This document shows, piece after piece, positions 2,343 through 58,732 of a DNA stretch of 64,000 nt. A model generated the notes under the pieces. It made no database searches and was not told the origin of the DNA. It saw only the letters and a list, made by a program, of their open reading frames with translations. Within the stretch, counting starts at the first letter, position 1. Every line of letters begins with the position of its first letter. The stretch is from Oopsacas minuta (lineage: Eukaryota > Animalia > Porifera), in the NCBI GenBank assembly GCA_024704765.1, contig JAKMXF010000177.1:558001-622000 (forward strand), given 5' to 3'. Position numbers and translations under genes: made by a program.

Positions 2343-2423
2343 AGCGAATTATTAGACTATATTTGACTTTTCTAATGTGCTTTAGCTCGACATTATCTAA
2401 ATTACTATAACTGGATTGTCCCT

Positions 2424-8400: not shown

Positions 8401-11400
8401 TATCAGATAGTGTAGGAGCAGGTAAATCTTTGAAAATTCAAAAGATTCAGTCAGATATATTGACGCATGATATAGTCCGTGAGGATGAGATAGAACAAGC
8501 AGCTGTCACTGTAGCTATTCACGGGAAGCAAGCTTCGGAGGAACATCTAGCTGAACAGCTACTGAGTAGGAACATTTGTGGAATGGAACATGGAGTAATG
8601 TTCCATGTAGATATTGCTTCTACCGTTCAGTGGGGTCTAGAACCAATACTCTTTAAGTTACTTGTATTAGGTGGTATCAGCAAGAGTACAGGTGAGTTCT
8701 GGCACTGTAGACACAAAGATTACTATGTTGTCGAAATAACATTAACCTCTGATCAGGATGCTTTAGCGAAATTTTCTCGACTTTTCCCAAGTATACAGTG
8801 CGTTCAACCTTCTGATGTGCTTGGATTCGCTGGTAATATTGATACACAAATCATCGATTTGGCTGAATTGAGAAGTGAACAGTATCAGAGAGTTAATGCG
8901 TATTTGGAGAGATCAGGGGATATTACAGAATTGGATAGTTTCCTTTTTCAGTCATCTACATCAAATAGGGGAGTCTCTCCTATTGACACAATGGCAAGAA
9001 TCATACAGCATTGTGATATTGTCCAGCCATCTTGGGCTGAATTAAGAAATTTCGTATCATTTCTTGATAAGCAACTTTATGATTGCGACAATTCAGATTA
9101 TTGCAAATTTGCAGCAATGGGCAATGAATGGAAAGGTTTTAAAAATTTCGTTGTCAACTTCATGATTCACATGTCGAAGGATTTTGCTACACCTTCCCTC
9201 AAAGCGGAAAATAGACAATCCATGAATGACGAACTGAACATGCCTGAACTCATTGATCAGCGAAGATGGGAGAATAATTCACACCCATATATATTTTTCA
9301 ATCCAGATAAACATACAATGACATTCCTAGGATTCCACATTTCAAAACAAGGACACTTACTAGACTCTGAAAATCCATCAACCACAATACGGGAAAATAT
9401 AATTAATCCTAATCTCGTTGAGTTATTGCACGCGAACGGAGTTAAATTTCGAGAAGATTATAATAAACTAACTAAAATAGAAAAGGTTATAAAAATGGCT
9501 GGCGTTATGGACTTAGACTTATTAACAGATCCAGATCCTGGTTATGTTTTGACTCTCGACAATATGAGGAAGATTCTAGCTATCGTGATGCGATTCCGTT
9601 GCAACATACCAGTAGTGATTATGGGAGAGACAGGCTGTGGAAAGACACGTCTCATTCAGTTCATGTGTTCATTACAAGCTTTAGAGACGGGAGCTACTAA
9701 CATGTTAATACTGAAAGTACATGGTGGTACTACTGAAAAGGATGTAATGACTAAAGTAGAAGAAGCTGAGGTGCTAGCTATGAAGAATTTCCGTGAGCAC
9801 GATATTGATACAGTATTGTTTTTTGATGAAGCTAACACTAGTCCAGCCATTGGTCTAATCAAAGAGATTATGTGTGACAGGAGAATGTACGGTAGACATA
9901 TTCGTAGCGACATTAGACTACAGTTCATTGCAGCTTGTAATCCTTATCGTAGACACACAAAGGAGATGTTGAACAAGCTGAGTACTGCTGGCCTTGGATT
10001 CTTCACCAAATCAAGTGAGACCACGGATAGACTAGGAGACATTCCTCTCCGTGAGTTAGTATACAGGGTTATGGAGCTTCCTGCTAGTCTGCGTCCGTTG
10101 GTGTGGGATTTCGGTCAACTTAGTAACAACATAGAGAACACTTACACACGTGAGATAGTAGTAAAATACCTCCGAGATCATAACAGTCCAATACAAGCAC
10201 GTGATGACATAGTAGATGTGATTAGTAGTGTACTTGCTGGTGCTCAGTGCTATATGAGAGAGAGGAAGGATGAGTGCAGCTTTGTGAGTTTGCGAGATAT
10301 AGAGAGAGCTATGCGAGTCATGCTTTGGTTCTTTGATGTACTAGACTTTTTTCAACCTGATGATACAGTGTCTGAATACGAATACCAAGGCAATGCGAAT
10401 TCTGACGATAATAGTATTGATTCTGAAGGTTCTCTTGAACTTGGTTCACCTGACGATGACATTCAGAATCTTATTCGCATCCATGATATCCTACCTGTTT
10501 CTATGATAGTCACAAAAAGTAATCTACAGACCAAGTCAATCAATCAGATTGACTACATAACATACAGTCTTATTCTGTCATTAGCTGTTTGCTACAGAGC
10601 CAAACTTCAAGAAAGAGAAGAATTTGATCTTAAAATTGTAGGGCTTTTTCAACATCCTCTCACGCCAATCAAAGATCACTTGATTATTCATAAAGAGGTT
10701 GACAGATGTCAACAGCTGATACTAGATGAGATGACTGTAGGTGCTAATATCGCTAAGAATAATGCTCTGAAAGAGAATGTATTTATGATGTTTGTGTGTA
10801 TTGAACTTAAGATTCCACTTTTCGTCATTGGTAAGCCAGGTAGCTCCAAATCTCTTGCAAAATCTATCATTTCAAACTCTATGCAAGGAAGCCGTAGTCC
10901 AGATTACAGCATTTTACGACATTTCAAAGAAGTTCAGATTATGTCATATCAATGCAGTCAGCTGTCTACTGCAGAGGGAATAATTGGAGTGTTCAAGAGT
11001 TGTAAGAACTTGCAACGCAAGACAGGAAGTAACAAGTTTGCCGCATGTGTTGTCCTGGATGAAGTAGGTTTAGCAGAAGATTCACCACTTCTTCCTCTTA
11101 AAGTACTTCATCCTCTCCTTGAAGATAACGATTATGAGTCTGAAGAAATAGAAAAAATGTCTGAACAAGACGAGCTTAAGACAAAAGAAATACATATTCC
11201 AGTGAGTGAGGAAAAAAAGCCGAGTAAAGTCGAGTTTGATGATATGAAAGATCGTGTAGCATTTATAGGCATTTCTAACTGGTCTCTTGATCCTGCCAAA
11301 ATGAATAGAGGTATTATGGTAGCGAGAGGAGATCCTGATGTAGATGAATTAATCGCGAGTGCTGAAGGAATATGTAAGTTTGATTCTCAAAGCGGTAAAC

Positions 11401-13178
11401 GATCCAAGAGTATACAAGTACAAATATCAAACTTGTCGCAAGCTTATCATAAGCTTACCCTCGACAAAACTGAGGTAGTAGGAGTTTCTCAAAATCGAGA
11501 ATATTACGGACTGAGAGATTTTTATAGTCTCATTAAAATGCTCGTTTTCATATGCAATGAATACAAAACCTTATTGTCACCTGGTATTTTGGAACATGCT
11601 GTCAAAAGAAACTTTGGTGGTATGACATGTGTAGATCCAGTCAAGATATTCAACGATATTGTTAAAATCCCTAGAAAAGACACTAACCAATGTCCAGATT
11701 CTTCTCCACTTGGATTGATCAGAGCAAACCTGACTAATCTTTCTCGCTCTTACCACGGTGAAACTCGTTACTTACTACTACTCACTGAGAACTATGCTGC
11801 TCTTAACATCTTGTTACGTTCACAAGACATGTGGCCAAAACTGCAGGATATTAGAAATATCCGTGTCATATTTGGATCTAGCTTTCCATGTGATCAGGAG
11901 TACTCTGCAGTTTGTCGTAACATCAATAGGATAAAGGTGTGCATGGAATCTGGTAAAACTATAATTTTGTTGAATCTTGAGAACCTCTATGAATCTCTGT
12001 ATGATGCTCTGAATCAGTACTACATGGAAATGAACAATCAAAGATATGTAGATCTGGGGTTAGGTACCCATCGAATGAAGTGTCGTGTTCACAACGAATT
12101 CAAACTAATTGTAGTTGCAGACACAGAGACCGTACAGGAGAGATTTCCTACTCCTCTAATCAATAGACTTGAGAAACATTTTCTAACTATGTCCACGGTT
12201 TTATCTGAAGATGAAATGATAATATCAAAATCCCTAACTGAATGGGCTAACGATTTCTCAACGTTAGATAAGGATCGATCACTAGGATTTCAACAGAGGG
12301 GCAGTTTTACAATAGGTGACTGTTTTATTGGATATCATGACGATACTTCTTCTTCCATTGTGTTCCACTTAATGAAGGAGATGTATCCAGCTAATACAAC
12401 TTCCTATACAAATGATAATTTTGTGGATGTGTTTGAAAGATGTAAAACACTATTATTAAGAATGGCAACTACTGATGCAGTGTTTCGTGTTAAGAACAGT
12501 TCTCTGTCTTGTCAATATGAAGAAATTATTAATAAATATTTTAAATCATGTCAAAGTAGTCTTGAAGGATACCTGAGGGAAGCACTCAAATGTACTCAAA
12601 TATGTGGAAATGTAACAGCTGAACTTAATGAAATAGTATCAAATGGTACAGGAGCACATCTCACACTCGCTACAACTCATTCCCGACTCCTGACAGAAAA
12701 AGATGTAGATCAGTTGAAAGAATGTCTCTCCACAGACTCAGACACTGATACAATTGAGATAACAAGTATCTCTCTACAACAGTTCCAGACAGAGCAACAA
12801 TACACTTGTGAGATTCAGAAGTTCTTGAGAGGGGAAACAGAGATTGAAACAAAGGAAGGTATACACAGAAAGATATTGCTTGTTCAGTGTGAGAGAGGGG
12901 CAGACAATGCTAAACTGATTGCTTGTGCTCGTCATAAGGCAGTAGATGAGTTGAAGGATTGGAGAGAAGAGAAAGGAGAATATATGTTTGAGGTATGTTT
13001 GGTATTCTTGATTCAGCTGAGTAGAGAAGCACATGGGAGTAAGTTTATCAGTTTTTGTGGAGGAGACTGGAACACAGTACACATTGATGATATCCGTTCT
13101 TTTGACAGCATACATATGCTTCCTATCTCTGATCTTATTAGAAAACAAATCTATCAAGTATTCGGTGGTTATAATTTG
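2424..13178 (+). CDS. RNF213: RNF213-like exon 1 (10.75 kb: N-arm, stalk, AAA+ core), split across ORFs 2424-4436, 4469-7489, 7465-8400 and 8301-13268 by three -1 shifts
   Basis: Each downstream frame is open before the upstream one closes. One added base restores continuity at AACATTTTGAT (~4138), CCAAAACATTC (~7423) and ATCAAACTGAA (~8278). The exon ends at TTG/GTGAGT (13178). Confidence 0.88.
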
Positions 13179-16100
13179 GTGAGTGTATTAGTCTTGTTAG
13201 ACAATTACGTATGTGTTCCTTTACAAACTACTTTTTCTAGGAATCTAAAACATATTCCCCTTCAATAAATTATCAAAAAATGAAAATTATTGAATGTATT
13301 CAATCAGCAGCTTCTAGATTGGATGATTCTAATGGTAGTGAAGAACGGACCCTTACTCGTATTGGTGACTTTGTTAAACTGTTTAAAGAAGAGAAGTATT
13401 TTGGTGAGTATAACACGCTTAGCTGTATGCACCAATTCTTAGGAGCGGTCTTTGTAGCGTGTTCCATATATGGATCCCGTACCATTTCATACCTGCCAAC
13501 CTGAGTGAGGAAAAGCCATACGGAAGATACTAATTTAGCTAGACATCGTGGGATGTCACATATTAGCATTCTATTGCACTACAATAATCGGGACAGTTCA
13601 AATACGGGTCTGACATGTTGTATGAATCTATGTGCAAATAATAATAATTTGTTATAATTTCAGGACTCTAGCATCACACCGTAAATAGATCAATAATAAT
13701 AATAATAATACTAACCACTATTTGTATAATTATTCAATAGTTAGTTTTATTTAGACATTTTAATATACCAACCTTCGGCTTGTCGCTTCGTGATGAACTC
13801 GGCTCCTTACGCCTCGAGCAGGCCCCACTGAGAGGGCTGTAGCCGGGCAAATCCCGGGGCCCCATCTTGATGGGCTCTTTAAGAATTTTTAATAAGCTGA
13901 GTGTTAGGGGAACAATATTCACCAAGGGGAAACACTCGGAGAAACAGGAATCCCTATGATACTGGAAATGTTTTGAATGGTAACTGTTAATTCTGTACAA
14001 ATTTATCCTCACGTTCGACACTTTTGTACTCCATGGCTGCTGAATCGGCACTTACGTGCCCGCCATGCGCCCAGATAAACCCCTTGCACTAAATTTTTTA
14101 CAAAGAAACACAAAATGTAGATTCACTAATATACGTAATGTGTTCTTGGTTATTTTAAATTTAATACTTGTATTATGAAATAATCTTGTAATTTAGATGA
14201 ATTTATTCAACCTTTCTGTCAAAGAATGACAAATCTATTGAAGAACCAGTATGATTCTTCATTAGATAGTAGTTATGACTGGATCTTACAAACTGCTAAC
14301 TGTGGAGAAGACATTAAATCTTGTGGGACCTTTCATAAAGCTGTTAATCTCCGTATTAATAGCACGATTACTCCTCTTTTATCAGAGTTGATCGCTTTCA
14401 TAGATAGAAATGCAAACTTTGAATTGGCAGTGCAAGATGAAAAGGTATCAAGATGTTATTATGATCTATGGTGTGATATTTTCAAAGATGAACAGCTGTT
14501 AGTATTTCAATACGCAGATACAATTTCTAGTAATACGTTCCTTCCTAGAAGGAAAGTACCTGTTTTGAGTGATGGAGCTGGAGGGAAATTCTTCAGAGCG
14601 AATTTCCCATTCTCATGGTTAATACAAGAGAATTGTTCTTTACTAATGTCTAAGGCCAAGAATTTAGCAGGTAATATCACAAATTTGATGAGAGTCGTGT
14701 ATAACGTGTTTGAATCATTTAAATTGCAGCACCTATACGGAGATGCACTATTCAACATGTACTATAGCCAACTTTTTATGAAATTTGTATCATGACCACA
14801 CCCAGATCAACTGCTAGTTCACGACTACAGGTTCTGTCAGGATTGGTTATGTTTGGTCACCTTTGGTAAAAATGGCCATAATGTTTGACCTACCAAAAAA
14901 TGACGTAAAATATCTCTGCCGCAGTGTGACCAAGTTTGGTCATATGATCCTCGACCACAGTTTAATAAACCCTGTGTTATAGTATTGAATATACTATCCA
15001 CTCTCTGGCCAAAAAAAGTATTTGAACACTCTGCCACAATTGACACATTGCACAAATATGTATTTTACTTTAGCTGCATAGGCTGAAGATAATTTCAAAC
15101 ATTTGTGAACTTAATTCTATCATATATTTTATCATTACAATCGCCTTTTCTGATATATCCACAGACTATTCAATACGTATATTCTCGCAATGTGTCATTA
15201 ATGGTATGGCGTTCCAATAATTTTGGATTTGGGAGTGTATACAAAACCAATCAAATTGGGAAGAGTTGGAAGAAATTCAGGATTCGATACTTCAATGCCT
15301 TATGTTAATCTTGCTGGGGTTCCTTTGGTGGCTCCCTACATATGAATTTCTTGAGATTGATTTGGGGAGGTCTCCTAAATCAATCTGAACAAATGCATAT
15401 TTAGTGCCCTACAAACCTTTCTATCTTCTAGGGAAAATTCTACCTTGGATGCACTTTGAGTCTGTATTTAATGAAACACCTCTTGGTAAACTTATTTACA
15501 AGAATTTAATGTCTAATGAGGAAAATGCCAAATATATTGAGCTTTATTTGAGAGACTTTATTTATATGAAGGTGTATCCTACTTCTAAAGCTGATTATTT
15601 GGTAAGTATTAGCTATTAGGATATTCTAATTCTGCTGATATTTCGAAATTAGTATCTTTTCGCATATTCATTCATCAATTGACTTTCGAGCATGTCGATT
15701 AGAGAGGAGTGCCTCGAAATGACTAGAAACTTCTCAGCAGGTATAGCTACTAATTCAGGGTAAATCCTTACTCCAACAAAGCAAAATGACTTGGAACAAC
15801 ATCCAAGCAGGTACAGCCACTTCAAACGAAACCATGTATACTTAATCGCCAACCTCTTGCGCGGAAAATGTTTAATCTTTAAACGGATTTATAAAGCACT
15901 GGGAGCAACAAGAAGGGCTCAGGTTATTCACTAGCCCAATTAAGGCAGATTTTTGATGAATTTTCTCTATTCTTACCCTTGGTGTTGTATCAGTACCTTT
16001 TGATTACTCAGCTACTCCAGAAATATTACGAACTTATTCATACTTCAAATTCGGACTTATTTCGGCGCCCATTCTTACAATATATAATAATATACACTCA

Positions 16101-19100
16101 ACTTCCCATTGAATAAAAGGATCATTTGGTCAATTCTTAATTCTTATGAATTATGAAATCTATTATGCACCAATTTTGCCAAATAATGCTTACTAAGCAT
16201 AAAATTACACATTTAGAGATTTTTGCTTATCTACATTAATGTAATATGTACATTCATCGAGTAAAAAATTAAAAGTCTATACATTCTAGATATATAAGTC
16301 ACATGTCTACAAGTTGGCCTGCTCACATAGCCCTGGCCCATTTTTCTGAACCTGCACCATGACCTTGTACAATATGAGTCCCGATTTTGGCAACTGAAAT
16401 TTCCATAACCTCGCTATATTAATGATAGATACTTTTAAGTTTTGCCTGATTGATTGAAACTATTCTTCTTAGGTATTTGAGTGTATCTTGCTGAATTGTA
16501 TCCACAATCTGTGTTCAATCGATGCGAGCGAAGGATATGAAGATATTCGTTATTCTGCTAACAAAACCACTATTCCTAAGATTCATTATGCTTACCAGGA
16601 CTCTAGACAGCTAATTGAGCTTTTCGAACAAGCTTTTGGATTGAAAGATACTTTGGGCAGAACAATCTCTGATATGCTCCCACAAATGTGGGATGATCAA
16701 GATATGAAGTTGAATTGTTTGGAATTAGTTTTGATAGAAGAAATCATTTCATTATGTTCTCATAATAAGGATCGTACTTCTTCAATGGAGCTAGCAGAAA
16801 TATATGTTACTGAGATCAGAAAATGGCAACCTCTGATTGAGAAGGGATTGTCTCGTACTCATTCAAATAAAGATATTAATGAATATCAGCTCGAAATTAG
16901 GTGATTTGAAAATTTCTAAAACAAATAATCATATACCGCTTATATAGGATCTGGATTGGAGTATACACTCAATGGCCAAAAGTATTGAAACACTCTGCCA
17001 CAATTGACACATGGCACAAATATGTATTTACTTTACTGCATATGCTGAAGATAATTTCAAACATTTGTGAACTTAATTCTATCATTAATTTTGTCATTAG
17101 AATCGCCTTTTCTGATATATCAACAGACTATTCAATACGTATATTATCGCATTGTGTCATATGCCGTATGTGTGTTACTAATGGTATGGTGTTCCAATAC
17201 ATTTGGCCAGGGAGTGTATAGCCCCTTTAGAAAGTAGGATAGGACCGACTACTATGAATGCAGACCATAACCAAAGATTGGATTCAGGATTTTATTGTCT
17301 TCCCTGATTATTCCAATGGAGTGCTAGTACTATTCTAGGTTATAGGGTTTAGAATACTTACTATGACTAGATTTATTTATTGTTTTCTCTGAATTTCTCT
17401 CATTATTATTATTTTGCAAATAGGCGGAAGTGGAACCGTATTATAGCAGTTCAATTATTTATCTCTCATTGCACGCTAGGAGTTGGTCTTAATGTTACAG
17501 AAAGCAGCATAAACAGATTATTCTTGGTAAGTAGAATGGACATCTTAGGTTGGAAAATTTCTGACACAAATTCATTGTATTACAATCCCTATTCGGTTAA
17601 CACCTACACTCTAGTATATTACGTAATTAATTTGTTCCCCTAAGGGGGTACATATTATCCAAGATCTACTTTATTAATAACTTAATTATTTACACATCTT
17701 CTATGTAAAATACAAAAGCAAGCTAGATATTAGGTTTCAATATGCTGTCAGGGGTAATTGGGCGTGTAGAGTCCGATTTTGACATTTTTAATTTTACAGT
17801 CAAACACATAGCGGCCACCTAAAAACAGGGTTGAGAAATTTCCAGAGAATTAAGCGCTCCTAATTTTTGGGCGCGCTCTCATCCCCGATCCTTATTCAGA
17901 AATAGGAGTGCACTCCGGCTCCCACTCCACAAAAATGGAGCGCGCTCATTTTCATTCTTTCAGATTTACATTAGGTTTGTATTTTAAGTAATTAATATTA
18001 AATTTATTTAATTATTTCCTGAATCTTAAATGGACCGTGCTCCTCTAATGCCAGAAGTGGAAAATCATTATCTTCTGAATATCAGCTCTAATCCTCGTAG
18101 ATTTTCAATCTGGTTAATATTTGTTTATATTCGCTATTTCAGCTCTAAAATTATGGAGTTTTGTTATCTCTCCCAAATATTATCCACATTCGAAGATAAA
18201 TGCTAGTTAGGGTTCTGTTTTGGGGCCAGGATTTTCAAATCCAGAGCGATCGATAGTTGTATAACTATAAACTATAAACGAAAATTCTGTATCATTAAAT
18301 GTACTTTTATTACCAATGAGGAGATGGTCACCCTTAGACTTAAAGTCAAAAATTTTTTTCTTGTAGAGTGGATGTTATTGTATTAACACGTTAATAAATT
18401 TGTATTGATATTAGTCTGTGTTTATTTTATTCACTAAACTCTTTAGCGTATACACTTATTAATTATATGATTAATCATATTTCACCCTCTTATCAATACT
18501 TCAAATTGGTCCTAGAGGTTAGCTTTCGTCTGATAATTAGGGTAAACAGGGAAATAGAATCGATTCTAACACTTTAAATTGTCTAACACGATTATTTACA
18601 TAAAATATTAACATTTTTTGTAATTGAATTATTTAATAGAACATTACAGACTAAAAATATACTAAAATAGATTTAGTGAAATTCCGTCAGTAAAGGCTGT
18701 GATTTGAGAATTCATTTATTTTAATTTCGCTACTAATTCTGTATCTTAGATCCTTGGAGAGTCTCCAGATTTTACTTCACTAAAAGTTGTTAATCATATT
18801 CTCACAATTATTTCTAACTGTTTTAAGAAAATGAACAAAGAATTAGGGTAAGGAATGTTATGAAGTCATTCTATTGAATGTGATCTAATTTTGTTATTTG
18901 TTCATAGGACTCAATCGCCTCTTAGAGAAAGGTTCAAAGGCTATGCAACAAGATTTTTCATCAGTATTCTCACCAATTTATCATTCAAATATTTAGAAAT
19001 TGAAGATGACAATACTGATATTATTCGTTTATTGATGGGATTTGTTTCACTAGATGAGACTACTTTCTCGCAAAGTTTAACAGAAGAGACGAATATTAAT

Positions 19101-22100
19101 ATACTCACTAAGAATGAACTTGATCCTTCTCCAGCATTCAGAACTTTCTTACTTCAACTTTTGATCAAACACAGGTAATATCTCAACTAAATACATATAC
19201 GTAATGCTAGCATTAGCACTTCGTCTCTTTGATGCTAAAGCAAATTTCAGATTTTAGCCATTTATTATTCAAAAATATTGAATAATGTTGAGTTTGTCAT
19301 TCCATTATATATTTGCAAAGTATTATTTTGGTAAATATTTATCCTCAATATTTGTTTATCGATCAATCATCTGAAATACAGTCCATATACGTATACCACA
19401 TCTATGATTGAGGGGAATATTCGAAAATTATCTGTGTAAAAGTTAAATTCTCCGAACCAGGCCCGAAATACTGCCAATATCAGTCAAATAAAACCTAAGA
19501 GTATTTAGGTTATTCAATCCATTATTCAAACGAATAGTTACGTATTATTTAATGAAAATGTAGATCAATCTCAGGCAGCTCTGTAAGAAGTGAAATACCT
19601 AGTTTTATCTCTTCATTTCACCCTAAGTAATGTAATGATGTTGTTAAGGTATTTTTTGTATAAATATAGTAGACATAGAATATTGATTGGTAGGGCCCTT
19701 TGGGACAACTTGAATTATAATGAGTCGAAAATCCTAACCCAGGACCAATTATCGGGCTAAGAATTCATCATCAATATCTATTATTAGGCACGATTTCTTT
19801 AAACAACACATTACTGAATATTTAACAGATACAGTTGGGAAGTTTCAAGATACATTGAAACAACGAGAATTATTTCTACTGATAGTTCAATCAATCGAGG
19901 TAGGATTTTGTGTATTATTAGATTTATTATGTTTGTTTAGGCCGTTTATAATTAGATATTATTAGAGCTAAAAACTTATTGCTTACATTTCTTTTCATTC
20001 GTTTTAATATTTGGATTACATAGAAACACTTTGCTGTCTCTAATTTACGGGTAGCGAGGGATCTGGTACAGGCAATAATATTGGGCATTTATCTTTATAC
20101 ACACTTTAGGAGGGTTAGGCCCGAATTTCTTAGAGAGAGAGAGAGCACTTTATAGAGCTATAGGACATCTCGGAATAACATACTATAAATCCTGTTCTTG
20201 ATAACGAACAAACAAGCAAACAAACAAACTAATAATAATTGACCAATAAAGTGGTTGAGAAGGAAAATATGTGAAAATTTATGGTCACATTGCAATAAAC
20301 TCATCTACAAACACAAAACACAACACAAATTATCGATTGATTAGGAGTAACCTCGGTGCAAGAAGGGCGTCTATTGCGGACACGAAATGTCTGAAACCGT
20401 GTACCGCAAGGAAGCGTAACTAACTTGTCTATATATACAGGAATGGGAAATTTATAGTCTTATTAGAGCGTAAAATTTCCAACTTTTCTAAAATGAATAT
20501 GAGCGTGCTCCAAAGGATGAAGAGCGCTTAATCCTCTGTGTAATATATTGCAATTACAATTACCGTATCCAGGTTCAGGGACTTTGCTGATCATTCCGAA
20601 AACTTATCTCGAATCCACATTATTCTTTCAAGTGTGAGGATCCGAGTAGAAATTGCGTCACTTTTCAGACCCGACCGACCAGAAAAACCCGAACCCGATT
20701 CCAAATCTGGTGAGGTCTTGCAGTCATCAATAATACCATATATAGTCATTTTCAAGATTACGTCATATTCATCAGCGATTTCATATCAAAATGTATTATC
20801 AGGGTATGGGAAGTCGGAAATATACTAATTGTTTGTAAATGATTTGGTACTATAATTATTCAATCAATCCCTGGTCCAAAATCTTAAGTAACCATCAATG
20901 CCTTATATAATTTAATATATGCTTAGAATGCTTTATGTTGATCAATTTTAGGATTTATTTCATCAACGGTTTAAAGAATATACTCAGGAACATCAGCACC
21001 AGCTTGTTAAAAGTCAAATAGATACTGAAATAGCAGTCAATTCTGATATTACGAAAGTATCTTATGAGTTACTTGAGCAGATTGGTACTCTGAGGTTTAT
21101 TAGTGTCCACATTTCTAATTGGATTATTGATTGTTATAACTTACTAAGAACACAATTGGATACACAACCACCTAACTATTTCACAGAGAGAGATAGGTTA
21201 ATCACAGATTTTAAAGACATGTGTAGGCTGGAAGGGAATGAATATCTTCATTTATTCCTCCTCAAGAATATTTATCATCAATTAGGCAGTGATACGTTGC
21301 AATTGATTACTAAGAATGATAAATGTTCCTGGATTATACCAGATGATGTGATGGATATCATTACTGAGGTATGTTTAACGGATAATTGTATATAGCTCAG
21401 CTATACTACATAGAATACAGTTTTTTGTGAGCCCTATAGATGCTAACGACATGACATGGTGTCTTTACGTCCGTCCACTCGCCGTGCGAAATCTAACAGT
21501 CCGATTAAGCTGAAAATATGTACACAAAACACATACATTTTGGGGTGGAGTTTGCACCTGCGATATGAATTATTCTAAAGTTAATATTCAAATCATTCTA
21601 TGTAAAATTCGAAAGCATGCTAGAGGCTAGGAGGATTCAATTTGGTGTAATTTGGTGCCGATTTTGAATTTTGGAGTGTGATAATCCTATTTTTACCTTT
21701 TGACATATATTTCAGTTTGATGCCAGAAAAATTCTTTTCAACGGCTAGTCAGGGTAATCGAGCATAGGTACAATACTAAAATTGTACTAAAATGGTACCA
21801 ATTTTTATTATCCATGGTCCATCCATATTTCATTTAATGACCTTCTGTGGTTATGTTGCAATATATTAGAGATTTTCGTGTGTACGCGTATACACTAAAT
21901 GTTTCGGGTGTACTCGTACACACGATATTTTTTAGTGTATTAGAGTTTACCTCAGCATATGGGTTGTTTATATGTGATTTGTTTGGATTAGTACATACCA
22001 GCTTTAGCGTTATCAATCAGATGTTATTACGTTTGTTGTCGTCGTTACTACTAATTGGGTGATATTTCTTGGATATACAATATATCTGTAATAATACATA

Positions 22101-25100
22101 TAAGCGTACATTCAATATACATAATATTTATCTGTTGATGGATTCAAGGAAACAGAATTTTATCAAATCATTATTGAAGTTGCAGGAACAAATTATTAAA
22201 TTAATACCACGTTATCAGCATAAGATATATTATCCATAGGAAAGATATGCGTGACATAATTATCTTAGAAAGAAACAAGAGCCAGAAAAAGAACTAAACA
22301 AACAAAACAAATAAAATGAACACTAATATAATGGAACTACAAAAACAAAGAAAATACTGATAACTATATCAAGCAATGAAGCTATAAACACGAATACATC
22401 ATGATCTTGCGGTAGACAAGTTATACATTTCGAACACCTCTTATCACAAACCTTGGAAATACACAGGGTATATAAACAACCCATATGCTATGGTAAACTC
22501 TAATACAATAAAAAATATTCGTGAGTACGCGTACACCCGAAACATTTAGTGTATACGCGTACACATGAATATCTCTGATACACTGCAACAGTAATATTGT
22601 TGCTGCTACGTGGCTTTTGGTTTGTAATGTGGCACTTCATGCTACGAGTATTATGAAATTCGCAAAAATATCGAAATTCGGGGAAGTTTGATTTTTATAC
22701 AGGTCCTGATGACGTACTATACATACATATATAGACACACACACACATATATATGTTACCGTCCAAATTGAGTAAGGTTATTCTTACACAAAAATTGAGA
22801 TTATACATTATGGTTTACTAAATAACAATATTTATAATTTCAAAGATATGATTTATGGTCTGCTAAAAAATATGAAATGTCCAATTCTGAAATTGTATGT
22901 TGGATCTAGATTCAATCTACAATTATATTCCTTCAATTGACTTAGTATTTGACAAATACTAATACTATTTGTATGGTTTAATACAATTAATATCTAAATA
23001 TACATTCACAATATACTATAAAAAATTAATAATCATGACAGAGTAGGAGATAATGTTGTAAATGTACTTCTAGAAAGTAGAACTCTATTAGTTTTCAGTG
23101 AATTAGTTGTCCAGGATAATTAGTTGACCAGTTGATTTCGGTGGTTTTGACAAAACCCTGTTTTACATTACTATCTGTTCTCGCATACGGTGCCTGTGAC
23201 ACCTATAGTTGCATTTAACCGGCTTTCGTTAGCACTAGTAAGTCTTCAGACAGCTGTCTTACACTAGCATAAGGCGAACTACGTAACTCTGCCTATACAG
23301 GTTTCAATCCGGGATTTACTTTTGGGAGGGAAGTTCTCATAATGGGGAACGCTATATATCCCTGACTATTCTTTCGTTTATTTAGCTTATTCAGATATTT
23401 TGTCCAATTACTATACTAAATACAAACAACAATAATTTCAATATGAATATTTTAGGAAAATCTGTCTTAATTAACAATACACAATATTTATGCTTGAACC
23501 TCACAATACTATTCTACGGCTCTTTTTCCCTGTATAATTATCAACAAATTCCTCCAACATATCATTCGTTAGGTGATTAAGGCCTTCAATGCATATGCCT
23601 ATCATATGTTCAAGCGCGCCATCTCCCTAAACCGAACTTCAACTATCGCCTAACTATGGTATGGAAAAGAGGAGATGGAGAAGGTCGAAAACGAACATAG
23701 AGAGACTAGATCAGTGCACTCCATCCTATTTCGGATATGGTCAATCACGCTTTGTATTTATGGCCGATACACTGTCTGAAGAAGTTGAATTTTTTCCTCT
23801 TCCATGATCACAATGTGTTTTCCACCAAGCTGAGTATCATCTGTAAAAACTAAAGACTGGTTCTGTTTACTATTTATTTAATCTCTGTTCTTCTTTCAGT
23901 GGTACTATTGACAATGAAGTAGTATCTTAATTGCACAAAATATCGCATAAGCTAGATATAACGAAAGAATAGTCAGGGATATATAGCGTTCCCCATTATG
24001 ACAACTTACCCCACAAATGTAAAATCCTGGATTGAACCCTGTAGAGGCAGGGTTACGTCGTTCGTCTCATGCTAGTGTAAGACAGCTGTCGGAAGACTTG
24101 CCAGTGTTAACGGAAGCAGGTTAAATGCAACTCGAGGTGTCACAGGCACTCTACCGTATGCGAGAACAGATAGTAATATAAAATAGGGTTCTTTCAAAAC
24201 CACTTCAATCAACTGGTTAATTACCCTAGACAATTAATTCACTGAAAACTAATAGAGATTCTACTTTCTAGAAGTACATTTACAGCATTATCTCCTACTC
24301 TGTCATGATTTTTAATTTTTTATAGTAAATATTGTGAATGTATATTTAGATATTAATTGTATTAAACCATACAAATAGTATTTGTAGTTTGAATCTAGAT
24401 ACAATATACAATTTTAGAATTGGATATTTCATGTTTATTAGCAGACCATAAATCAGGAGTGGGCAAACTACTCGCTTGTGATTTTGAACCAGCCCGCCTG
24501 GCTTAAGGTATTTGGGTACTCTAATTATTTGATCACTGTCTTACTCTTCCTTACGCATTCGGAAATTTCGCCCCATGGAAAATTTCATTAATATAGTTAA
24601 TTATTGTTTGTTTTACAAATAGCTAGTAGAATTTCTCTAATAATTTAGAACCTGGAACGTACTCGTAAGTCAATATGGCCCGCATAAAAATATGGAATTA
24701 GAATGCGACCCGCGCATAAAAAAGTTTGCCCACCCTGACATAAATCATATCTTTGAAACTATAAAATATTGTTTTTTAGTAAACCATAATATTTAATCTC
24801 AAATTTTGTTTCAAAATAACCTTACTCGTGAATACGTAATATAAGGACTGGAAACAGCAAAAAAAACTGGACCATGGATGAACTACAAGTGCATTCGTTT
24901 TTTGCTATTTATTATTATTAGTTATGAACTTTAAACGATAAATGTACCTATTTTAATTGGAAATCGACTTTGAGATTGGACCAGGGATGAGATAGAAGTC
25001 ATTTAAATAAAGTATATTATTATCATAGCATATCATTGCTTATAACTGAAATAATAACATAATAATAGGTCTAAAACAACATGAATATAATAAAGGAATA

Positions 25101-28100
25101 GGAAACCAAAATCATTACAAAACTGTTAAGTAATTTATTAGCTGGAACTAACATGTCTCCTAAATAGATCTAAATTTCTTCAATTTCCGAGAATCATTCT
25201 TACTAGATGTGATTTCAGAGTTGACATTGCGAACTTTATTAGCTAGTATGCAATTAGTACATACACTAAGGATCTTCCTAAGGATAGTCCAACCAGAAGT
25301 ACCACAGCCCTTACAATTATCTCTCCAATGTGGGCTAAAATTATCAACCAACATATTTTCAGTCAGCTGAATTAATACCTTCCTTGATGGCGAGGAACAG
25401 AAGTGTTTCCTAAGAGTTTCATTCTCATCAACCTTGATAAATATTTTCCATAATACAACAATTGATTCAACTACTATTTCTGAAGGCCATTTCAGAAAAC
25501 CACGATCAATGTACCTTATAAGGTCATATTTAATCGTGTCTGTAATATCAATATCTTGGTTCTCAGTTAGTTGCTGACTACAAAGATGGCAAGTGGCAGT
25601 TTTAAGATAAGAGTATACAGCGTAACCACCAATAAATACAATTAATTGGAGAACATGAAGGTCGAGGTCAATAGAATTTAGATCATGTAACAATTCAGTA
25701 TACTTATCGCAAGATATATTTGTGAATTCATCCAAAGTTGGAGAAAATGTGTTAATGGATTGTTTTTGTTTTGAATAAACTAGAGATCATCAAGGCAAAA
25801 CCTTTTTAGTCGAAGTAGTAGGATCAATCTCACCAACCACCTTCCCGCCTAAACAACATAATATGAAAAGTTAGAACACCATAATTAGAAATTATATTAC
25901 CATGTATTACCTTGATAAGAAATATCAGATGAAACGTGGATCTCGTCCATATTGAGGGCAACATGTCGATTCCCCTTAGAAAAATCTACTGTTAAGTTCT
26001 TAAGTATATGGAAATATTCACTATCTAACCCAGGGGTGCCCAACATACGGCCCGCGGGCCAAATCTGGCCCGCGTAATAATTTTATCCGGCCCGCGCAAA
26101 ATTTGCACTTTGTAATATATACTATTTCTTCATGGACAATTCCTAAGCCACATTTCGATAGCATTCATACTGGGTGTCGAATTTCAATGTATTTGACATT
26201 TTGAGGATTCTTATTCATTTTCAATACACGACAGGTGCATGCGTTTAGTAATAATAATCCTTAGCGGTGTATAAATATAAACTAGTATAATTCTAACCTT
26301 ATAATTGAAATTCAGATACTGCGTTTACTCATCTCCTAAATTACCTGTAGAATATATATATCATTTATATTAATGGAGCCTTGTTCTAAGAAAAGGAAAG
26401 TTGATATCGAGAGTAGAACTTTCAACGACAGCTGGACCGAGAAATACTTTTTCACCAACTTGCTTAATATGCAAGCAGGTCATCGCAGTGATGAAAGAGT
26501 ACAACATCCAAAGACACTATAGTGCTAAACATCAAGATTACAAAGCATGCTCAGGGCAGATACGGAAGGATAGAGTACAATCATTAATAAGGGAACTTTC
26601 GGTACAGCAAAATATTTTTACAAATACTAATTCTGAGTCAGAAAAAGCTGTTCGTGCAAGCTTTGCCATTTCCAAACTTATTGCAAAGAAATATAAGCCA
26701 TTTACTGATGGTGAATTTATCAAGGAGTGTGTTATTACTTTGGCGCAAATTATGTGCCCAGAGAAACAAGTTATTTGAAAACATTAGCCTTTCAAGAATG
26801 ACAATTAGCCGTAGGATAGAGAACTTATCAACAGACTTAAAACTTACTTTAGAAAAACGTGCGAGTGAGTTCCAGTACTATTCTCTGGCCCTTGATGAGA
26901 GCACAGATGCCACTGATACTGTCCAACTTGCTGTTTTTGTAAGAAGAATCGATTCAAAGTTTAATCTTACAGAAGAATTGGCGAACTTACATAGCCTTCA
27001 CGATAAAACAACTGGAGTTGATATTTATAAAGCGGTGATGAATGGAATTGATGCTATCGGACTTAAGTTGAATAATTTATGTGAGGTAACGACAGATGGC
27101 GCACCATCAATGATTGGGAAGGAAAGGGGCTTCGTTGCTCTTCTGGAGAAAGAAAGGATCAATTCAGGAAGTAGTACTATGAAATTAGTCAAAGTGCATT
27201 GTATAATTCACCAGGAAAATCTCTGTTCAAAGCCATTAAGAATGCAGGGTGTAATGGAAATAGTAGTGAAAACTGTCAACTTCATTCGTGCTCGAGGACT
27301 CAATCATCGACAATTTCGAAAACTTTTAGACGAAATGGATTCTCAATATGGAGACCTTCTTTACTATACGGAAGTACGATGGTTAAGTAGGGGTGCGATG
27401 CTTCGACGCTTTTATGAACTCAAAGAAGAAGTATTTCATTTTATGGAGGAGAAGGGGAAACCAGTTTTTCATCTCAATGATCCATTATGGTTGTGTGACT
27501 TGGCATTTTTGGTCGATATCACTCAATATTTGAATAACCTCAACTCAAAATTACAAGGAAAAAATCTGCTTATTCACAATTTGTTTGACTTCATTTGCGC
27601 TTTTGAAAGAAAGCTCGAGATATGGGAAAAACAATTAATAGAAGAAAATCTTTATCACTTTGAAACCTTATCAAAACATTCCCCTCCAGATACAGGTGTA
27701 TACACAATCAAAATCAATTCCCTGCACAAAGAATTCGAGAATAGATTTAAAGATCTTCGTAGCAATATTGTAAACTTCGCTATATTCTCAAATCCTTTCT
27801 CTTTAGAACCTATTGAACTCCCCGAGCATCTCCAGCTAGAATTGGTTGACATGCAATGTAACCAGGACTTGAAAGCAAAATTCAATGATGTCACACTTAT
27901 GGACTTTTATCAAAAGTATTTATCATCATCAGATTACCCCAATCTTATCAAGCATTGTAAGATGATGGCTTGTTTATTTGGGAGCACATACATATGTGAA
28001 CAACTGTTCTCCCAAATGAAGCTAGTAAAAGCAAATGCAGAACTGTTTTACTGATAGACATCTCGAAGATACATTAAGAATAGCTACTACGGATATGGAA

Positions 28101-31100
28101 CAAAACATCGACCATATAGTCAGACATATGCGTCATCAATCGTCATCCATGTCAAAGTAGTAAATCATTGTCTGTACTCGTATTAGCGGTGGTAAAATGA
28201 GTATTCGGGTTTCTTATTAGTTAGTATTTTTGATCATTTTCTGTAGTCTGCCAATATTTCATATGTGTGTTCCCTTTCTGTAGCATTTCCACTTGGATAT
28301 TCCAACAAATTTTCTCTAAATAAATCTGAAAATTATAAATTGGTCCATGTGGCCCACCAAACTATTGAGGAAGCCAATGTGGCCCGCAATTAAATCGAGT
28401 TGGGCACCCCTGATCTAACCCAATGCAAGACGATAATGCACGAAGTAATCTAGTTGTTGGAAGAAATAGACAATCCAATGATTGAAAAAACCGATAGCAA
28501 GCAGGTGAGATCAAATGTGCTTTCAAGGCGACTGCCTAGAATGAGTAAAAAGGGTAAAAAAAGAAACAAAATAGATAAGAAATGTAGAAACACTAACCTG
28601 AGTAACTACGTTATATCCCCTTTTGGTTGGTGAAACTAATGAGTTTCCAAGCTAACAAGTAATGAACTGTAGGAGAGGTAACAAAGTAGTACCCTTTACA
28701 TCATGCTCAGTTATTTCTGTATTTTCTAATATTGAGATTGATTATTGTAATTTGGTGACGGCCTCTTTGATATTTTTCTAGAAAAAACTGGATTCAAATA
28801 ACTCAGGATTAGTGTAGTTTAGAATATCACCAATTAAGATTTCAATTCCGTATATCTGTTAATCAACTGAGATTCAAAGGAACTTGGTGTTGGCAACAAA
28901 CTGCTGAAACTGTTAAATCTGAATGAATTGATAAGGTAGATAGAATATGTATAGACTGATTGGCGAATTCCAGCTGTATGATCTCTAAGGTATTGCTAGA
29001 GGAGTACCAGATCGCCCAATCTTGGTTAAGGTGTAACTCTGGCAACTTAATTTTAAGATCCTCAAAATTCCCCAAACCGAACCGTAATGAATCTTGTTGA
29101 TCTTGTATAATGCTATCATGAAGAGCTTTAGCAAAGTTTTCCTCTTCCTTAGATTCAAGATTTAAACGCTTTGCTATTTGACCAGTTATATTCAAGTATG
29201 ATGGGCCTGCTTGGAAAATAATAGGCACTGCATTCGGACGATAAATTGGTCTAATGCGTGGTATTTCAGAGCAGCAACCATCAGCTTGGAGTGCCCGGTC
29301 AACGTGGATAAGATCTTCCTCCTAAAATGGTGTATGCAAATGAATATCTTATCCTCTGGAAGGTCTTCGGCTAGATCCCTATGAAGAGCTCTAATCCACT
29401 TCCCTTTCAAGTCTTAGATCCTTTCGGTAAACTGAAAACAGTGCCAGTAGGGTGACCTCTGTAATTAGTTTTGCACCCAAATACAGAACATGTATTTAGC
29501 ATTAAGAAGTGTCTAAAATACATGTGAATAAAAGAAAAAGGTAAAACGAAGAAGGAGGAAATGTATAAAGACGAAAAATCAGGGAATTCCAATCACGGGA
29601 CAAGTTTCCGGTAAAATACAGCATAGAATATTCCAAACAGTACCTGTGTTCATTTCATAATATAAATTAATGATATAATCCAATTATGGTTTAGATGTTA
29701 TGGGTTATTAATGATATTTTATTTAAATGACTTCTATCTCATCCCTGGTCCAATTTCAGAGTCGATTTCCAATTGAAATAGCCACATTTATCGTTTAAAG
29801 TTCATAAGTAATAATAAATAGCACAAAAACGAATGCACTTGTAGTTCATCCATGATCCAGTATTTTTTGTTGTTACCGTCCTTATATTACGTAGTTCACG
29901 CCTTACTCAATTTGGACGGTAACATATATACAGTAGATGTCGGATATAAGAACACCAACTTGAATTACGGATACTTTTGTGTTCTATTCCATGGATTTTT
30001 TTACCGGTTATAAGAACATTCTATGCCGGATATAAGAACATCATAATAGAAAACGGTTACTATATACCCTATATAAATTCTGCTGGTTATAAGAACACTC
30101 TTAGTGTAGTACTAAAATTGGTTCTCATTACCAGTATGTTTGTAGAAGTCGGGATTAATTATATAGTAGATGTGAGAATACTTTTCTTTAATATGGTTTC
30201 TACATCCAAATGTGATTAAATGAAGTGTTCTCATAACTGGCATCTACTATACTACATAGCGGTTATAAGAAAATTATGTCCAGTTCCCGACGATTTTCTT
30301 ATAACTGACATTCACTGTACTGTAACTTTAAACTGGCAAAGAAACAAACTATTTATCATACTAAAGATGAGAATGCTAATTGAACTAACTTTTCTAAGTA
30401 GTTGATTCTTGTCTAATTTATCGATTGATCTATGATTATTTGTAGTTACCAACATTTGTACCTGATTACTTCATTATTTATGGCGAAGATTATCTAACTA
30501 TCACGAATAAAGTGGAACAATTATATCTTGTCGAAAAGAAAGATGCTCTTACCCTTTTCTTCAATACAGAACCAGTAAGTAATTGTAATAGTTCCTAGTT
30601 AGTTAGTGTGTTCAGGGAATATCTCAAAGTCCGGGAACAGATTCCTTAGCAAGAAATTTCTTCACCAGTGTGTTTATAAGGGTGTCTACTAAATCTCAAA
30701 AAATTTGAATGCAACTCCCGTAGGGGAACCTAACCAAATTCTATAAACTGGAAATTGTCACCTGTGTCTCTCTCGAAATTATTCATAAGGGATAGTTACC
30801 AGGCTATTAAGACTGAAGATGTTCTGATCACTTTTGAGTGATTACAAATATCACAATAAACATTAACATAGCCTACTCTATGAAATTAGATTCGATTTAA
30901 AGAGGAAAGGAGTTTATGCATTTTAACGTGTTCAAATATTCCTGGTGGTTGTGGATTCCTACTTTCAGCAACTGTCATCGGGTACCCTATGGGAGTTGAA
31001 TTTAAACTTATTGAAACATGTTAGTGAACACTCTTCAGGCGCGGTACGTCCCTTCGAAAAGTGCTACGGCGACAAATTCACAGTACAGTACAAACCGGTT

Positions 31101-45023: not shown

Positions 45024-45726
45024 AAATATAAGACTTTCATTGAAAGTACATATTTATTCCATTGTGTATCATATTTCAGATAGACTTAGTAGATATACAA
45101 ACCTCAGCGAAGTAAAGACTACGGATCTATTATTTGCTATTAAATTCTAATAATTAGGAAAAGGAATAGATTTGGGAGATCTAATTAGAAATAACAATAT
45201 TTCAATGTATTAATGTTAGCAATCTAATATACTGCATAACGTATAATTCAGGGATGATTAGATGTATCGCTAATTTTCATCTCCGTCTGTCTATTACATG
45301 GCAGTATGAGACGGTCGATTGGTCAGGTTTCAACCGAACCAACATTTGGATTGCTAATACAAATAGTATTAGTCGAACGGACCAACTTGGATAATCTGAT
45401 TTAGACCAACTTGAGGAATTGAAATCTTGTAACGACCTGTATCAAAATCTATGGACGGTGTATGTTTGGTGGCTTAGCTATGTTACAAGGCTCAGGAAAT
45501 TGGTGACTATCCCTACCAAACCACGGAATTTGTCGAGCACAAGAGAGTAGGCTCCAGCATGGTTGGCGAGGTAATGGAATAATTCCTACTCTTTCCAATG
45601 AGACGAATAGAAACATATGTGTATGGTCTACCAATCCGCATCCCGAGTCTATGCCCCTGTTATTTTGCAAATGCCTACCAATGAATGAAACATGATTGGT
45701 TTTGCTTGAATTTTGAACTCTTAATA

Positions 45727-58351: not shown

Positions 58352-58732
58352 TTAATTCTTAGGGGTATCAATATTAATTCCATATTTCTCTTTGAGCTTT
58401 TCCAAATGTTCCTTCCGCTTATCAGGGTCCATCCTACTGAATGCTTTATGTGGCTGGTAATACAATACTATGAGATATCTGTTACATACGTTAAAGCCAG
58501 AGAGATGCTCACAAGCAACTTTAGCATCAAATATATCATCAAATATTACGTAAGCAGTTCCTTTAGTGTCAGGGGCGTTTCCTAGACGTATTTGCCGGAT
58601 CGGGCCGAACTTACCGAAAATATCATAGAGTTCTTCTGAGGATATCTTCCATGGTAGGTTACGTATATAGAGTATACGATTAACTTCAGGAGGGAGACGT
58701 ATACCTGCTCGTTTAGCGGCAATAAGAGCCAT
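58352..58732 (-). CDS. SF3B6: Splicing factor 3B subunit 6 (p14), intronless
   Basis: [70 protein letters not shown] is the highly conserved p14 RRM. Confidence 0.97.

What the first reader, a model, noticed from the sequence alone, without database searches (positions are those of the whole stretch)
17424..19174. RNF213 homologue with no RING domain but an intact RZ finger
The spliced product across exons 6-8 reads RRKWNRIIAVQLFISHC..ILGESPDFTSLKVVNHILTIISNCFKKMNKELG-TQSPLRERFKGYATRFFISILTNLSF. In human RNF213 (recalled sequence) the equivalent flanks RWNRIFSTALFVEH..CKETASKTLSRFG and HARFRQMCNSFFVDLV enclose the C3HC4 RING plus a linker. Here those flanks are joined directly. The only intron at the junction (18848-18907) is 60 bp, too short to hide a RING exon, and I see no RING motif in any other exon. 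The RZ finger, with Cys and His at the positions of human C4516/H4537, is fully conserved. It is established that RNF213 LPS ubiquitylation and transthiolation depend on RZ rather than RING. This would be a natural RZ-only mysterin in an early-branching animal, suggesting RING is a later insertion or was lost here.
Basis: partly seen in the sequence, partly recalled or inferred. Interest (0 to 1): 0.8.

Follow-up and report, generated by a model that had tools for sequence, protein, structure and literature searches.

The report
RNF213 homologue that lost its RING exon
This giant, expressed RNF213 (mysterin) gene, probably from a sponge, has no RING domain but keeps an intact RZ finger; the RING was lost secondarily, and the same loss recurs in many other animals whose RING-less proteins already sit unremarked in public databases.

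Summary
Intron-free contigs of one public run (X4, which behaves like RNA) join them exactly at GT..AG sites, including the 60-nt intron 18848-18907. A RING profile built from 16 homologues finds no RING in any frame of the 64-kb window, although it finds one in 120 of 165 RZ-bearing homologues. The RZ finger is intact (Pfam PF20173), with all six Cys/His at the human spacing.

The RING is not a later insertion.
- It sits at the same site in homoscleromorph sponges, corals and bilaterians.
- A member of the window's own clade (locus L004) carries it as a separate, frame-neutral exon between the equivalents of exons 7 and 8.
- The window and two relatives (L001, L002) lack that exon and have only a 57-60-nt intron there.

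The state is also not unique. The same clean gap occurs in annotated RNF213 proteins of frogs, amphioxus, a hemichordate, a crinoid, bivalves and four coral genera; a lamprey protein also lacks the RING by profile. These proteins are scattered on the tree (at least 12 changes of state; a single RING-less clade is rejected).

Other first-stage notes report RING-less RNF213 copies elsewhere in this genome. I found no paper describing natural RING-less RNF213. Interest is moderate.

The parts
2376..13265 (+). N-terminal arm and dynein-like AAA core, read as four overlapping open frames (2376-4433, 4112-7486, 7417-8397, 8247-13265) with three frame changes
   Evidence: Pfam AAA_5 E=1.2e-6. A 1200-aa query gives 4826 homologues, the best annotated as RNF213. 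The frame changes lie at about 4145-4181, 7309-7471 and 8277-8331, relative to the single 3459-aa ORF of relative P0002.
9624..9647 (+). Walker A motif GETGCGKT of an active AAA unit
   Evidence: The same motif is present in Pleurodeles, Oscarella and Xenopus RNF213.
16473..16900 (+). Exon upstream of the RING site (E3 module)
   Evidence: X4 joint 16900|17424 at GT..AG, and a loose end linking it to 15601. It is 46% identical to L001.
17424..17526 (+).
   Evidence: X4 joints on both sides. It aligns to the WxRI..(A/M)LF(V/I)EH motif of all homologues and is 72% identical to L001.
17527..18749 (+). Intron of 1223 nt with repeats and no coding RING
   Evidence: X4 skips it (depth about 450-560 at the joint), X4 depth inside is about 0-28 outside repeat-rich bins, and the RING HMM gives no hit. 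The equivalent intron in L001 is only 73 nt.
18750..18847 (+).
   Evidence: X4 joints. It aligns to the DF(K/T)....(F)L..C segment that precedes the RING in homologues.
18848..18907 (+). 60-nt GT..AG intron at the place where relatives carry the RING exon
   Evidence: X4 contigs join 18847 to 18908 with a G>A allele. L001 and L002 have 57-60-nt introns at the same place and phase, and L004 has a phase 2-2 RING exon there.
18908..19174 (+).
   Evidence: It aligns to FR..CNSFF(M/V)(D/E)LVS..CF of homologues immediately after the RING and linker. tblastn to P0026 gives E=4e-5. It is 64% identical to L001.
19788..21368 (+). Exons 19788-19899 and 20952-21368 of the E3 module
   Evidence: X4 joint 19899|20952 at GT..AG, and loose ends 19174->19788 and 21368->30446.
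21369..30445 (+). Long intron holding a transposon (about 22754-29924)
Evidence: X4 loose end from 21368 to the sequence at 30446. Pfam zf-C2H2_12 in 26374-26775.
30446..30574 (+). E3-module exon
   Evidence: X4 loose end. It is 60% identical to L001. The donor at 30575 was deduced.
33220..33594 (+). Exon carrying the first half of the RZ finger (Cys 33562-33564, His 33574-33576)
   Evidence: Pfam PF20173 E=4e-8. Splice sites were deduced from GTAAGT/AG and from the ends of homologue alignments.
33777..33949 (+). Exon carrying the second half of the RZ finger: candidate nucleophile Cys 33777-33779, zinc Cys 33804-33806 and 33813-33815, His 33840-33842
   Evidence: Pfam PF20173 E=7e-9. The spacing equals that of human C4516, C4525, C4528 and H4537 (PMC11549300).
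34006..39056 (+). Downstream E3 and C-terminal-domain exons (34006-34281, 37455-37718, 37726-38061, 38114-38404, 38412-38798, 38823-39056)
   Evidence: tblastn of ten full-length homologues hits these in order. The exact splice sites were not determined.

Best explanation
This is an expressed gene of the RNF213/mysterin family in a poorly sampled animal, probably a sponge. It encodes the dynein-like AAA core, the E3 scaffold and the RZ finger, but the exon that encodes the C3HC4 RING and its linker (about 60 residues) has been deleted. In a more distant member of the same clade, the RING lies on its own exon, which starts and ends in phase 2. Removing that exon therefore keeps the reading frame. 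In the window and two close relatives only a 57-60-nt intron remains at that spot. By analogy with human RNF213, the protein would work as an RZ-only, transthiolating E3. A cysteine-reactive E2 would hand ubiquitin to the RZ cysteine (codon 33777-33779). The neighbouring histidine (33840-33842) would then help pass it to the substrate, under control of the AAA ATPase. Shown here: the exon structure, the absence of the RING, the integrity of the RZ finger, and the loss inside the clade. Inferred: the enzymatic activity, the E2 choice, the substrate and an immune role.
For: Splicing: intron-free X4 contigs with GT..AG joints across five introns, and the spliced frame is open over 792 aa. No RING: six-frame HMM search of the window and of L001, with a positive control on homologues. 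Position: P0024 aligns as two pieces, leaving 74 of its residues (including RING 3181-3219) against 13 window residues. The alignment shows a clean gap between conserved flanks, and the flanks map to human RNF213 on either side of the RING. Loss rather than gain: L004 has RING exon about 22622-22813 (HMM E=1.4e-5) between the exon-7-like and exon-8-like exons, all in phase 2. L001 and L002 lack it, like the window. The window's clade has 100% support and is sister to RING-bearing sponges. RZ: Pfam and the six-residue motif. Function by analogy: removing the RING does not impair ubiquitylation of bacteria by human RNF213, whereas H4509A and C4516S abolish it (PMC11549300), and mouse RNF213 acts in a RING-independent manner with UbcH7 (PMC7311170).
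Against: Three frame changes in the N-terminal half, relative to the uninterrupted ORF of the relative, could mean that this copy is a transcribed pseudogene or that the assembly has indels. I could not lay reads there. X4 is not on record as RNA; its nature is inferred from its behaviour. With several paralogues in the genome, some contigs laid at 95-99% identity may come from sister copies. No biochemical evidence exists for any RING-less RNF213. The organism is not identified.
Confidence: 0.75

Rival explanations
1. This copy is a transcribed pseudogene, a decaying member of a tandem RNF213 array. On this reading the missing RING is part of the decay rather than a working RZ-only design.
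For: There are three frame changes in 2376-8331 relative to the single ORF of P0002. Earlier notes on the same genome report other RNF213 copies with decayed RING or RZ (unchecked).
Against: At least ten downstream exons keep their frame and splice sites over 792 aa. All six RZ residues are intact. The same RING-less structure is conserved in L001 and L002 with 46-72% identity in exons and unalignable introns. X4 depth on the exons is high. HiFi-style assemblies of AT-rich DNA commonly carry single-base indels.
Confidence: 0.12
2. The RING function is supplied in trans. RING-less copies would work together with RING-bearing paralogues or other RING E3s, so the organism is not really RZ-only.
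For: Many species carry both RING-bearing and RING-less paralogues (Stylophora, Montipora, Acropora, Branchiostoma, Glandiceps, Mizuhopecten, Mya). Human RNF213 assembles cooperatively into coats (PMC11549300).
Against: Nothing was tested here. Human RNF213 needs no RING for the activities assayed. I did not establish whether frogs, or the window's genome, keep a RING-bearing copy.
Confidence: 0.07
3. The RING-less state is ancestral, and the RING was inserted later in other animals.
For: The window's lineage branches early if it is a sponge.
Against: The RING sits at the same site in Oscarella, Corticium, corals and bilaterians, and also in L004 inside the window's own clade. RING-less proteins are scattered next to RING-bearing kin, with at least 12 changes of state. 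Forcing the 15 named RING-less rows into one clade is rejected (p-AU 7e-95; the group was named after the tree was seen).
Confidence: 0.03
4. A RING exon exists but was missed, for example in an alternative isoform or an assembly gap.
For: Intron 17527-18749 is long and rich in repeats.
Against: The RING HMM, run with filters off on stop-free stretches of 15 aa or more in all six frames of the 64-kb window, gives nothing better than E=0.13, and that hit lies outside the gene. X4 contigs skip the whole intron. L001 has only 73 nt and 58 nt of intron at these two positions.
Confidence: 0.03

Closest known systems
Human and mouse RNF213 (mysterin), PDB 6TAX, 7OIK, 8S24
   Same: Dynein-like AAA core with the GETGCGKT Walker A, an E3 scaffold with conserved flanks around the RING site, an RZ finger with identical C/H spacing, and a C-terminal domain.
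   Different: The RING and its linker (about 60 residues; mouse E3-RING 3940-3999 according to PMC7311170) are absent. E3-region identity to RING-bearing homologues is only about 21-26%. The N-arm and CBM20 domain were not examined.
Engineered RNF213 with the RING deleted (Otten 2021, Ahel 2020, Crespillo-Casado 2024)
   Same: The architecture is the same as in the laboratory deletion, which still ubiquitylates Salmonella and Listeria and still auto-ubiquitylates (PMC11549300; PMC7311170).
   Different: The deletion here is natural, fixed in at least three related genes, and removes exactly one exon. Its activity has not been tested.
RING-less RNF213-like proteins already in public protein sets
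   Same: Xenopus tropicalis XP_012809139, Mizuhopecten XP_021359260, and Stylophora, Montipora, Antedon and Branchiostoma models show the same clean gap at the same site in the alignment, and four of them have RZ as the only Pfam ligase domain. Hyperolius XP_068089245, Lampetra XP_078736318, Glandiceps XP_077981787/90, and Acropora and Pocillopora models lack the RING by profile.
   Different: These are independent losses in other lineages. Most are gene predictions that I did not check against RNA. I found none discussed in a paper.
ZNFX1
   Same: It shares the RZ finger, the only other known home of this domain (PMC11549300), and it has no RING.
   Different: ZNFX1 is an SF1 helicase and is unrelated outside the RZ finger. 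The window's protein is an RNF213 by descent.

Membership tests
RNF213 / mysterin family (by descent) | Dynein-like AAA core homologous to RNF213 | tested here: met
   Pfam AAA_5 and AAA_7. phmmer E=0 with 45-50% identity to annotated RNF213 proteins over 1200 aa. The protein is nested within RNF213 sequences on the tree.
RNF213 / mysterin family (by descent) | E3 scaffold (segments flanking the RING and running down to the RZ finger) | tested here: met
   blastp of the spliced 792-aa model gives E down to 3e-53 against RNF213-like proteins over about 570 aa. The flank motifs are conserved in the alignment.
RNF213 / mysterin family (by descent) | C3HC4 RING inside the E3 module (the name-giving domain) | tested here: not met
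   No RING in six frames, a clean gap in the alignment, and RNA-type contigs join the flanks. The protein is therefore filed as a RING-less variant of the family, not as a canonical RNF213.
RNF213 / mysterin family (by descent) | RZ finger about 450-500 residues after the RING site | tested here: met
   PF20173 at E=4e-8 and 7e-9. It lies about 420 residues after the junction in the model.
RNF213 / mysterin family (by descent) | C-terminal domain | tested here: met
   tblastn of ten homologues hits 37.5-39.05 kb in the right order. The exon borders were not resolved.
RING-type E3 ligases | Cross-brace C3HC4 or C3H2C3 zinc-binding domain | tested here: not met
   The 55 residues between the flank motifs hold one Cys and one His.
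RZ-finger transthiolating E3s (RNF213, ZNFX1) | Zinc ligands C, H, C, C plus a nucleophile Cys and a general-base His with the spacing C-x3-H-x6-C-x8-C-x2-C-x8-H | tested here: met
   compared with human C4505, H4509, C4516, C4525, C4528 and H4537 (PMC11549300).
RZ-finger transthiolating E3s (RNF213, ZNFX1) | Ubiquitin thioester on the RZ cysteine, and transfer that depends on a cysteine-reactive E2 | not testable with these tools
   This needs biochemistry.

The most novel reading that the evidence does not exclude
The RING of RNF213 sits on a frame-neutral cassette exon. It has been discarded independently many times across animals (sponge lineage, stony corals, bivalves, crinoid, hemichordate, amphioxus, lamprey, frogs), while the RZ finger is retained in the copies examined here. 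That would be evolutionary evidence that RZ is the core ligase and the RING an expendable accessory. In this probable sponge, a tandem array of RZ-only RNF213 genes lies among immune-type genes (AIG1/GIMAP-like GTPase and a reported CARD adaptor), which suggests an ancient RZ-only branch of cell-autonomous defence.
Probability: 0.5. Interest if true: 0.6.

Novelty: new variant of a known kind. Interest (0 to 1): 0.45.

Why it matters
Work on human RNF213 shows that ubiquitylation of bacteria and auto-ubiquitylation need the RZ finger and not the RING, and no genuine RING substrate is known (PMC11549300). Natural RNF213 genes that have dropped the RING exon and kept the RZ finger are an independent, evolutionary test of that conclusion. 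They also offer ready-made RZ-only enzymes for biochemistry. The scattered pattern of loss, which includes frogs, raises a concrete question: what does the RING do in the lineages that keep it? On the other hand, the state is not rare and can already be seen in public proteomes. This single gene is therefore one more example rather than a discovery on its own.

Tried and rejected
- Searching single exons (143 aa and 89 aa) against PDB sequences gave nothing. The region is too diverged, so I went through homologues instead.
- A strict C3HC4 regex and the precomputed Pfam lists both under-call RINGs. Many mollusc, nemertean and echinoderm proteins that look RING-less have a diverged RING by the family-specific HMM. 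I therefore did not use the Pfam lists to count losses.
- The idea that the window's exon 8 keeps the first codons of the old RING exon ('TQ' in both the window and L004) was dropped, because L001 and L002 do not share it.
- Enumerating GT..AG mini-introns to explain the three N-terminal frame changes was uninformative. Comparison with P0002 suggests single-base indels.
- Identifying the species with SF3B6 failed. The only close hit (96%) is an unnamed ENA protein on a contig of the same length (1,026,804 nt) as the contig of L001, which suggests synteny but gives no name.
- L003 and L005 did not reach the E3 region within 10 kb, so the RING state of P0010 and P0020 is unknown.
- I did not predict a structure, because a spliced protein cannot be passed by reference and I did not type long sequences.
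Full report
**What is in the window.**
- The DNA is AT-rich (about 29-41% G+C per 2-kb bin) and eukaryotic.
- One giant + strand gene runs from about 2376 to beyond 39 kb.
- Its largest exon (8247-13265) carries Pfam AAA_5 and AAA_7 and the Walker A motif GETGCGKT.
- A 1200-aa piece of that exon finds 4826 relatives in the representative library.
- The named relatives are annotated as RNF213 or rnf213-alpha-like, from hemichordates, nemerteans, molluscs, corals, sponges, sharks and amphibians.
- Pfam ZnF_RZ-type is split over 33220-33606 and 33777-33950.

**Checking the observation: splicing.** I laid four public runs on 16400-21500 (5101 letters, within the operators' limit).
- Runs X1-X3 cover introns and exons alike, so they behave like DNA.
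- Run X4 is from the same sample and is not on record as RNA. It has depth in the hundreds to thousands on exons and about 0-28 across the interior of intron 17527-18749, apart from repeat-rich bins.
- X4 contigs skip 16901-17423, 17527-18749 and 19900-20951 at GT..AG sites.
- X4 also removes the 60-nt intron 18848-18907. Two alleles are seen at that joint, GGA or GAA in place of GGG, so the frame is kept.
- Loose ends link 15601 to 16473, 19174 to 19788, and 21368 to 30446.
- I take X4 to be RNA or cDNA; that is an inference from its behaviour.
- Splicing these exons, plus 33220-33594, 33777-33949 and 34006-34281 (deduced from consensus sites and from the ends of homologue alignments), gives 792 residues with no stop.

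**Checking the observation: is the RING really absent?**
- I built a profile from the RINGs of 16 homologues and searched all stop-free stretches of 15 aa or more, in six frames, with filters off.
- The best window hit has E=0.13 and lies outside the gene.
- As a control, the same profile scores 15-64 bits on homologues, including many not used to build it. It finds a RING 440-535 residues before the RZ finger in nearly all of the 120 positives among 165 RZ-bearing proteins.
- The 55 residues between the two conserved flank motifs of the window's protein hold one Cys and one His.

**Checking the observation: is this the right place?**
- blastp of the model against the RING-bearing nemertean protein P0024 gives two pieces. 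They leave 74 of its residues, including RING 3181-3219, opposite 13 residues of the window.
- Several other RING-bearing homologues (for example P0023, P0034, P0035, P0022) start aligning at model residues 217-219, about 25 residues after their RING.
- A multiple alignment shows conserved flanks (W.R....LF.EH ... DF......FL..C | RING + linker | FR..CN.FF..LVS..CF) with a clean gap of about 60 residues in the window.
- The salamander RNF213 in that alignment maps onto human RNF213 in the PDB on both sides of the RING.

**The RZ finger.** The motif C-x3-H-x6-C-x8-C-x2-C-x8-H is complete. It matches human C4505, H4509, C4516, C4525, C4528 and H4537, described as four zinc ligands plus the proposed nucleophile and general base (PMC11549300).

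**Loss or late gain?** I looked at the contigs that encode the nearest relatives.
- L001 (70% identical in the AAA core) has the same three exons separated by introns of only 73 and 58 nt, and no RING.
- A protein 96% identical to the window's SF3B6 lies on a contig of the same length (1,026,804 nt) as the contig of L001. L001 therefore probably comes from a close relative with a syntenic region.
- L002 (63% identical) is the same, with a 57-nt intron.
- L004 (about 50% identical) has a RING hit (E=1.4e-5) in an exon of its own, at about 22622-22813. That exon lies between the exon-7-like and exon-8-like exons, and it starts and ends in phase 2.
- The window's junction is also in phase 2. The simplest reading is that one frame-neutral exon was deleted in an ancestor of the window, L001 and L002.
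- On a maximum-likelihood tree of the AAA core (66 rows, 1111 columns), these sequences form one clade with 100% SH-aLRT support. That clade is sister (support 82) to the RING-bearing homoscleromorph sponges Corticium and Oscarella.

**How common is the RING-less state?** The same clean gap appears in annotated proteins of six other lineages. Pfam on the C-terminal halves of four of them finds the RZ finger as the only ligase domain.
- Clean gap in the alignment: Xenopus tropicalis RNF213, Mizuhopecten, Stylophora, Montipora, Antedon and Branchiostoma.
- RING-less by profile: Hyperolius (a second frog family, sister to Xenopus on the tree), a lamprey paralogue, two Glandiceps paralogues, Mya, Acropora and Pocillopora.
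- On the tree these proteins lie next to RING-bearing kin of their own phylum. At least 12 changes of state are needed.
- Holding the 15 named RING-less rows together costs 3293 log-likelihood units (p-AU 7e-95; the group was named after I had seen the tree).
- Seven coral sequences from four genera form one RING-less clade, sister to the RING-bearing coral clade. This argues against annotation error in that case.
- For most of the other species I did not check the gene models against RNA.
- RING-less is a minority: 45 of 165 in my sample, which includes isoforms and near-duplicates.
- The precomputed Pfam lists greatly overstate RING loss, because many invertebrate RINGs are too diverged for them.

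**Mechanism.**
- By analogy with the mammalian enzyme, this protein should act as an RZ-only transthiolating E3 gated by its AAA ATPase.
- Mouse RNF213 works with the cysteine-reactive E2 UbcH7 in a RING-independent manner (PMC7311170).
- Human RNF213 lacking the RING still ubiquitylates Salmonella and Listeria. H4509A or C4516S abolishes this (PMC11549300).
- None of this has been tested for the window's protein.

**Caveats.**
- Relative to the single 3459-aa ORF of P0002, the window changes frame three times in the N-terminal half, at about 4145-4181, 7309-7471 and 8277-8331. These are either assembly indels or real lesions. My one read-laying run was already spent, so I cannot tell which.
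'Sponge' rests on one gene tree and on the kind of assemblies that hold its relatives.
- Paralogues may contribute some X4 contigs.

**Literature and earlier notes.**
- Four full-text searches found no paper on natural RING-less RNF213. The state is visible in public protein sets.
- Earlier first-stage notes of this scan report further RING-less or otherwise altered RNF213 copies in the same genome, including one 12 kb before this window. I did not test those.

**Verdict.** This is a RING-less variant of a known family and one instance of a recurrent, apparently undescribed pattern. Interest is moderate.

Noticed in passing
window 4145-4181, 7309-7471, 8277-8331: Three frame changes in the N-terminal half of the RNF213 gene, relative to the uninterrupted 3459-aa ORF of relative P0002. 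They are either single-base assembly indels or real lesions.
   Followed up: partly
window 22754-29924 (ORFs 26374-26775 and 26591-28051): A transposon sits inside the 9-kb intron 21369-30445. Pfam finds only a Spin-doc-type zinc finger (zf-C2H2_12, E=7e-7).
   Followed up: partly
window 53225-54139 (+): A 305-aa ORF with an AIG1/GIMAP-type GTPase domain (E=6e-10), an immune-type GTPase next to the RNF213 gene.
   Followed up: no
window 43023-45053 (-): A single 677-aa ORF with a tyrosine-kinase-type catalytic domain (PK_Tyr_Ser-Thr, E=3e-80) and an N-terminal half with no Pfam match.
   Followed up: no
window 58355-58732 (-): An intronless SF3B6 (p14) gene. It is 96% identical to a protein on a contig of the same length (1,026,804 nt) as the ENA contig that carries L001, which suggests conserved synteny with a close relative.
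   Followed up: partly
L001 29490-30380 and beyond; L001 10001-25834: The relative's contig carries a second RNF213-like gene (3507-aa ORF) starting about 3.7 kb after the first one ends.
   Followed up: no
P0040 (Xenopus tropicalis) and P0046 (Hyperolius riggenbachi): The annotated RNF213 proteins of two frog families lack the RING and are sisters inside the tetrapod clade. This suggests a loss early in anurans, in a vertebrate model organism.
   Followed up: partly
window 17939-18109 and 17084-17254: Very high depth in the DNA-like runs (up to about 8800 against about 30-150 nearby) marks repeated elements in the introns.
   Followed up: no
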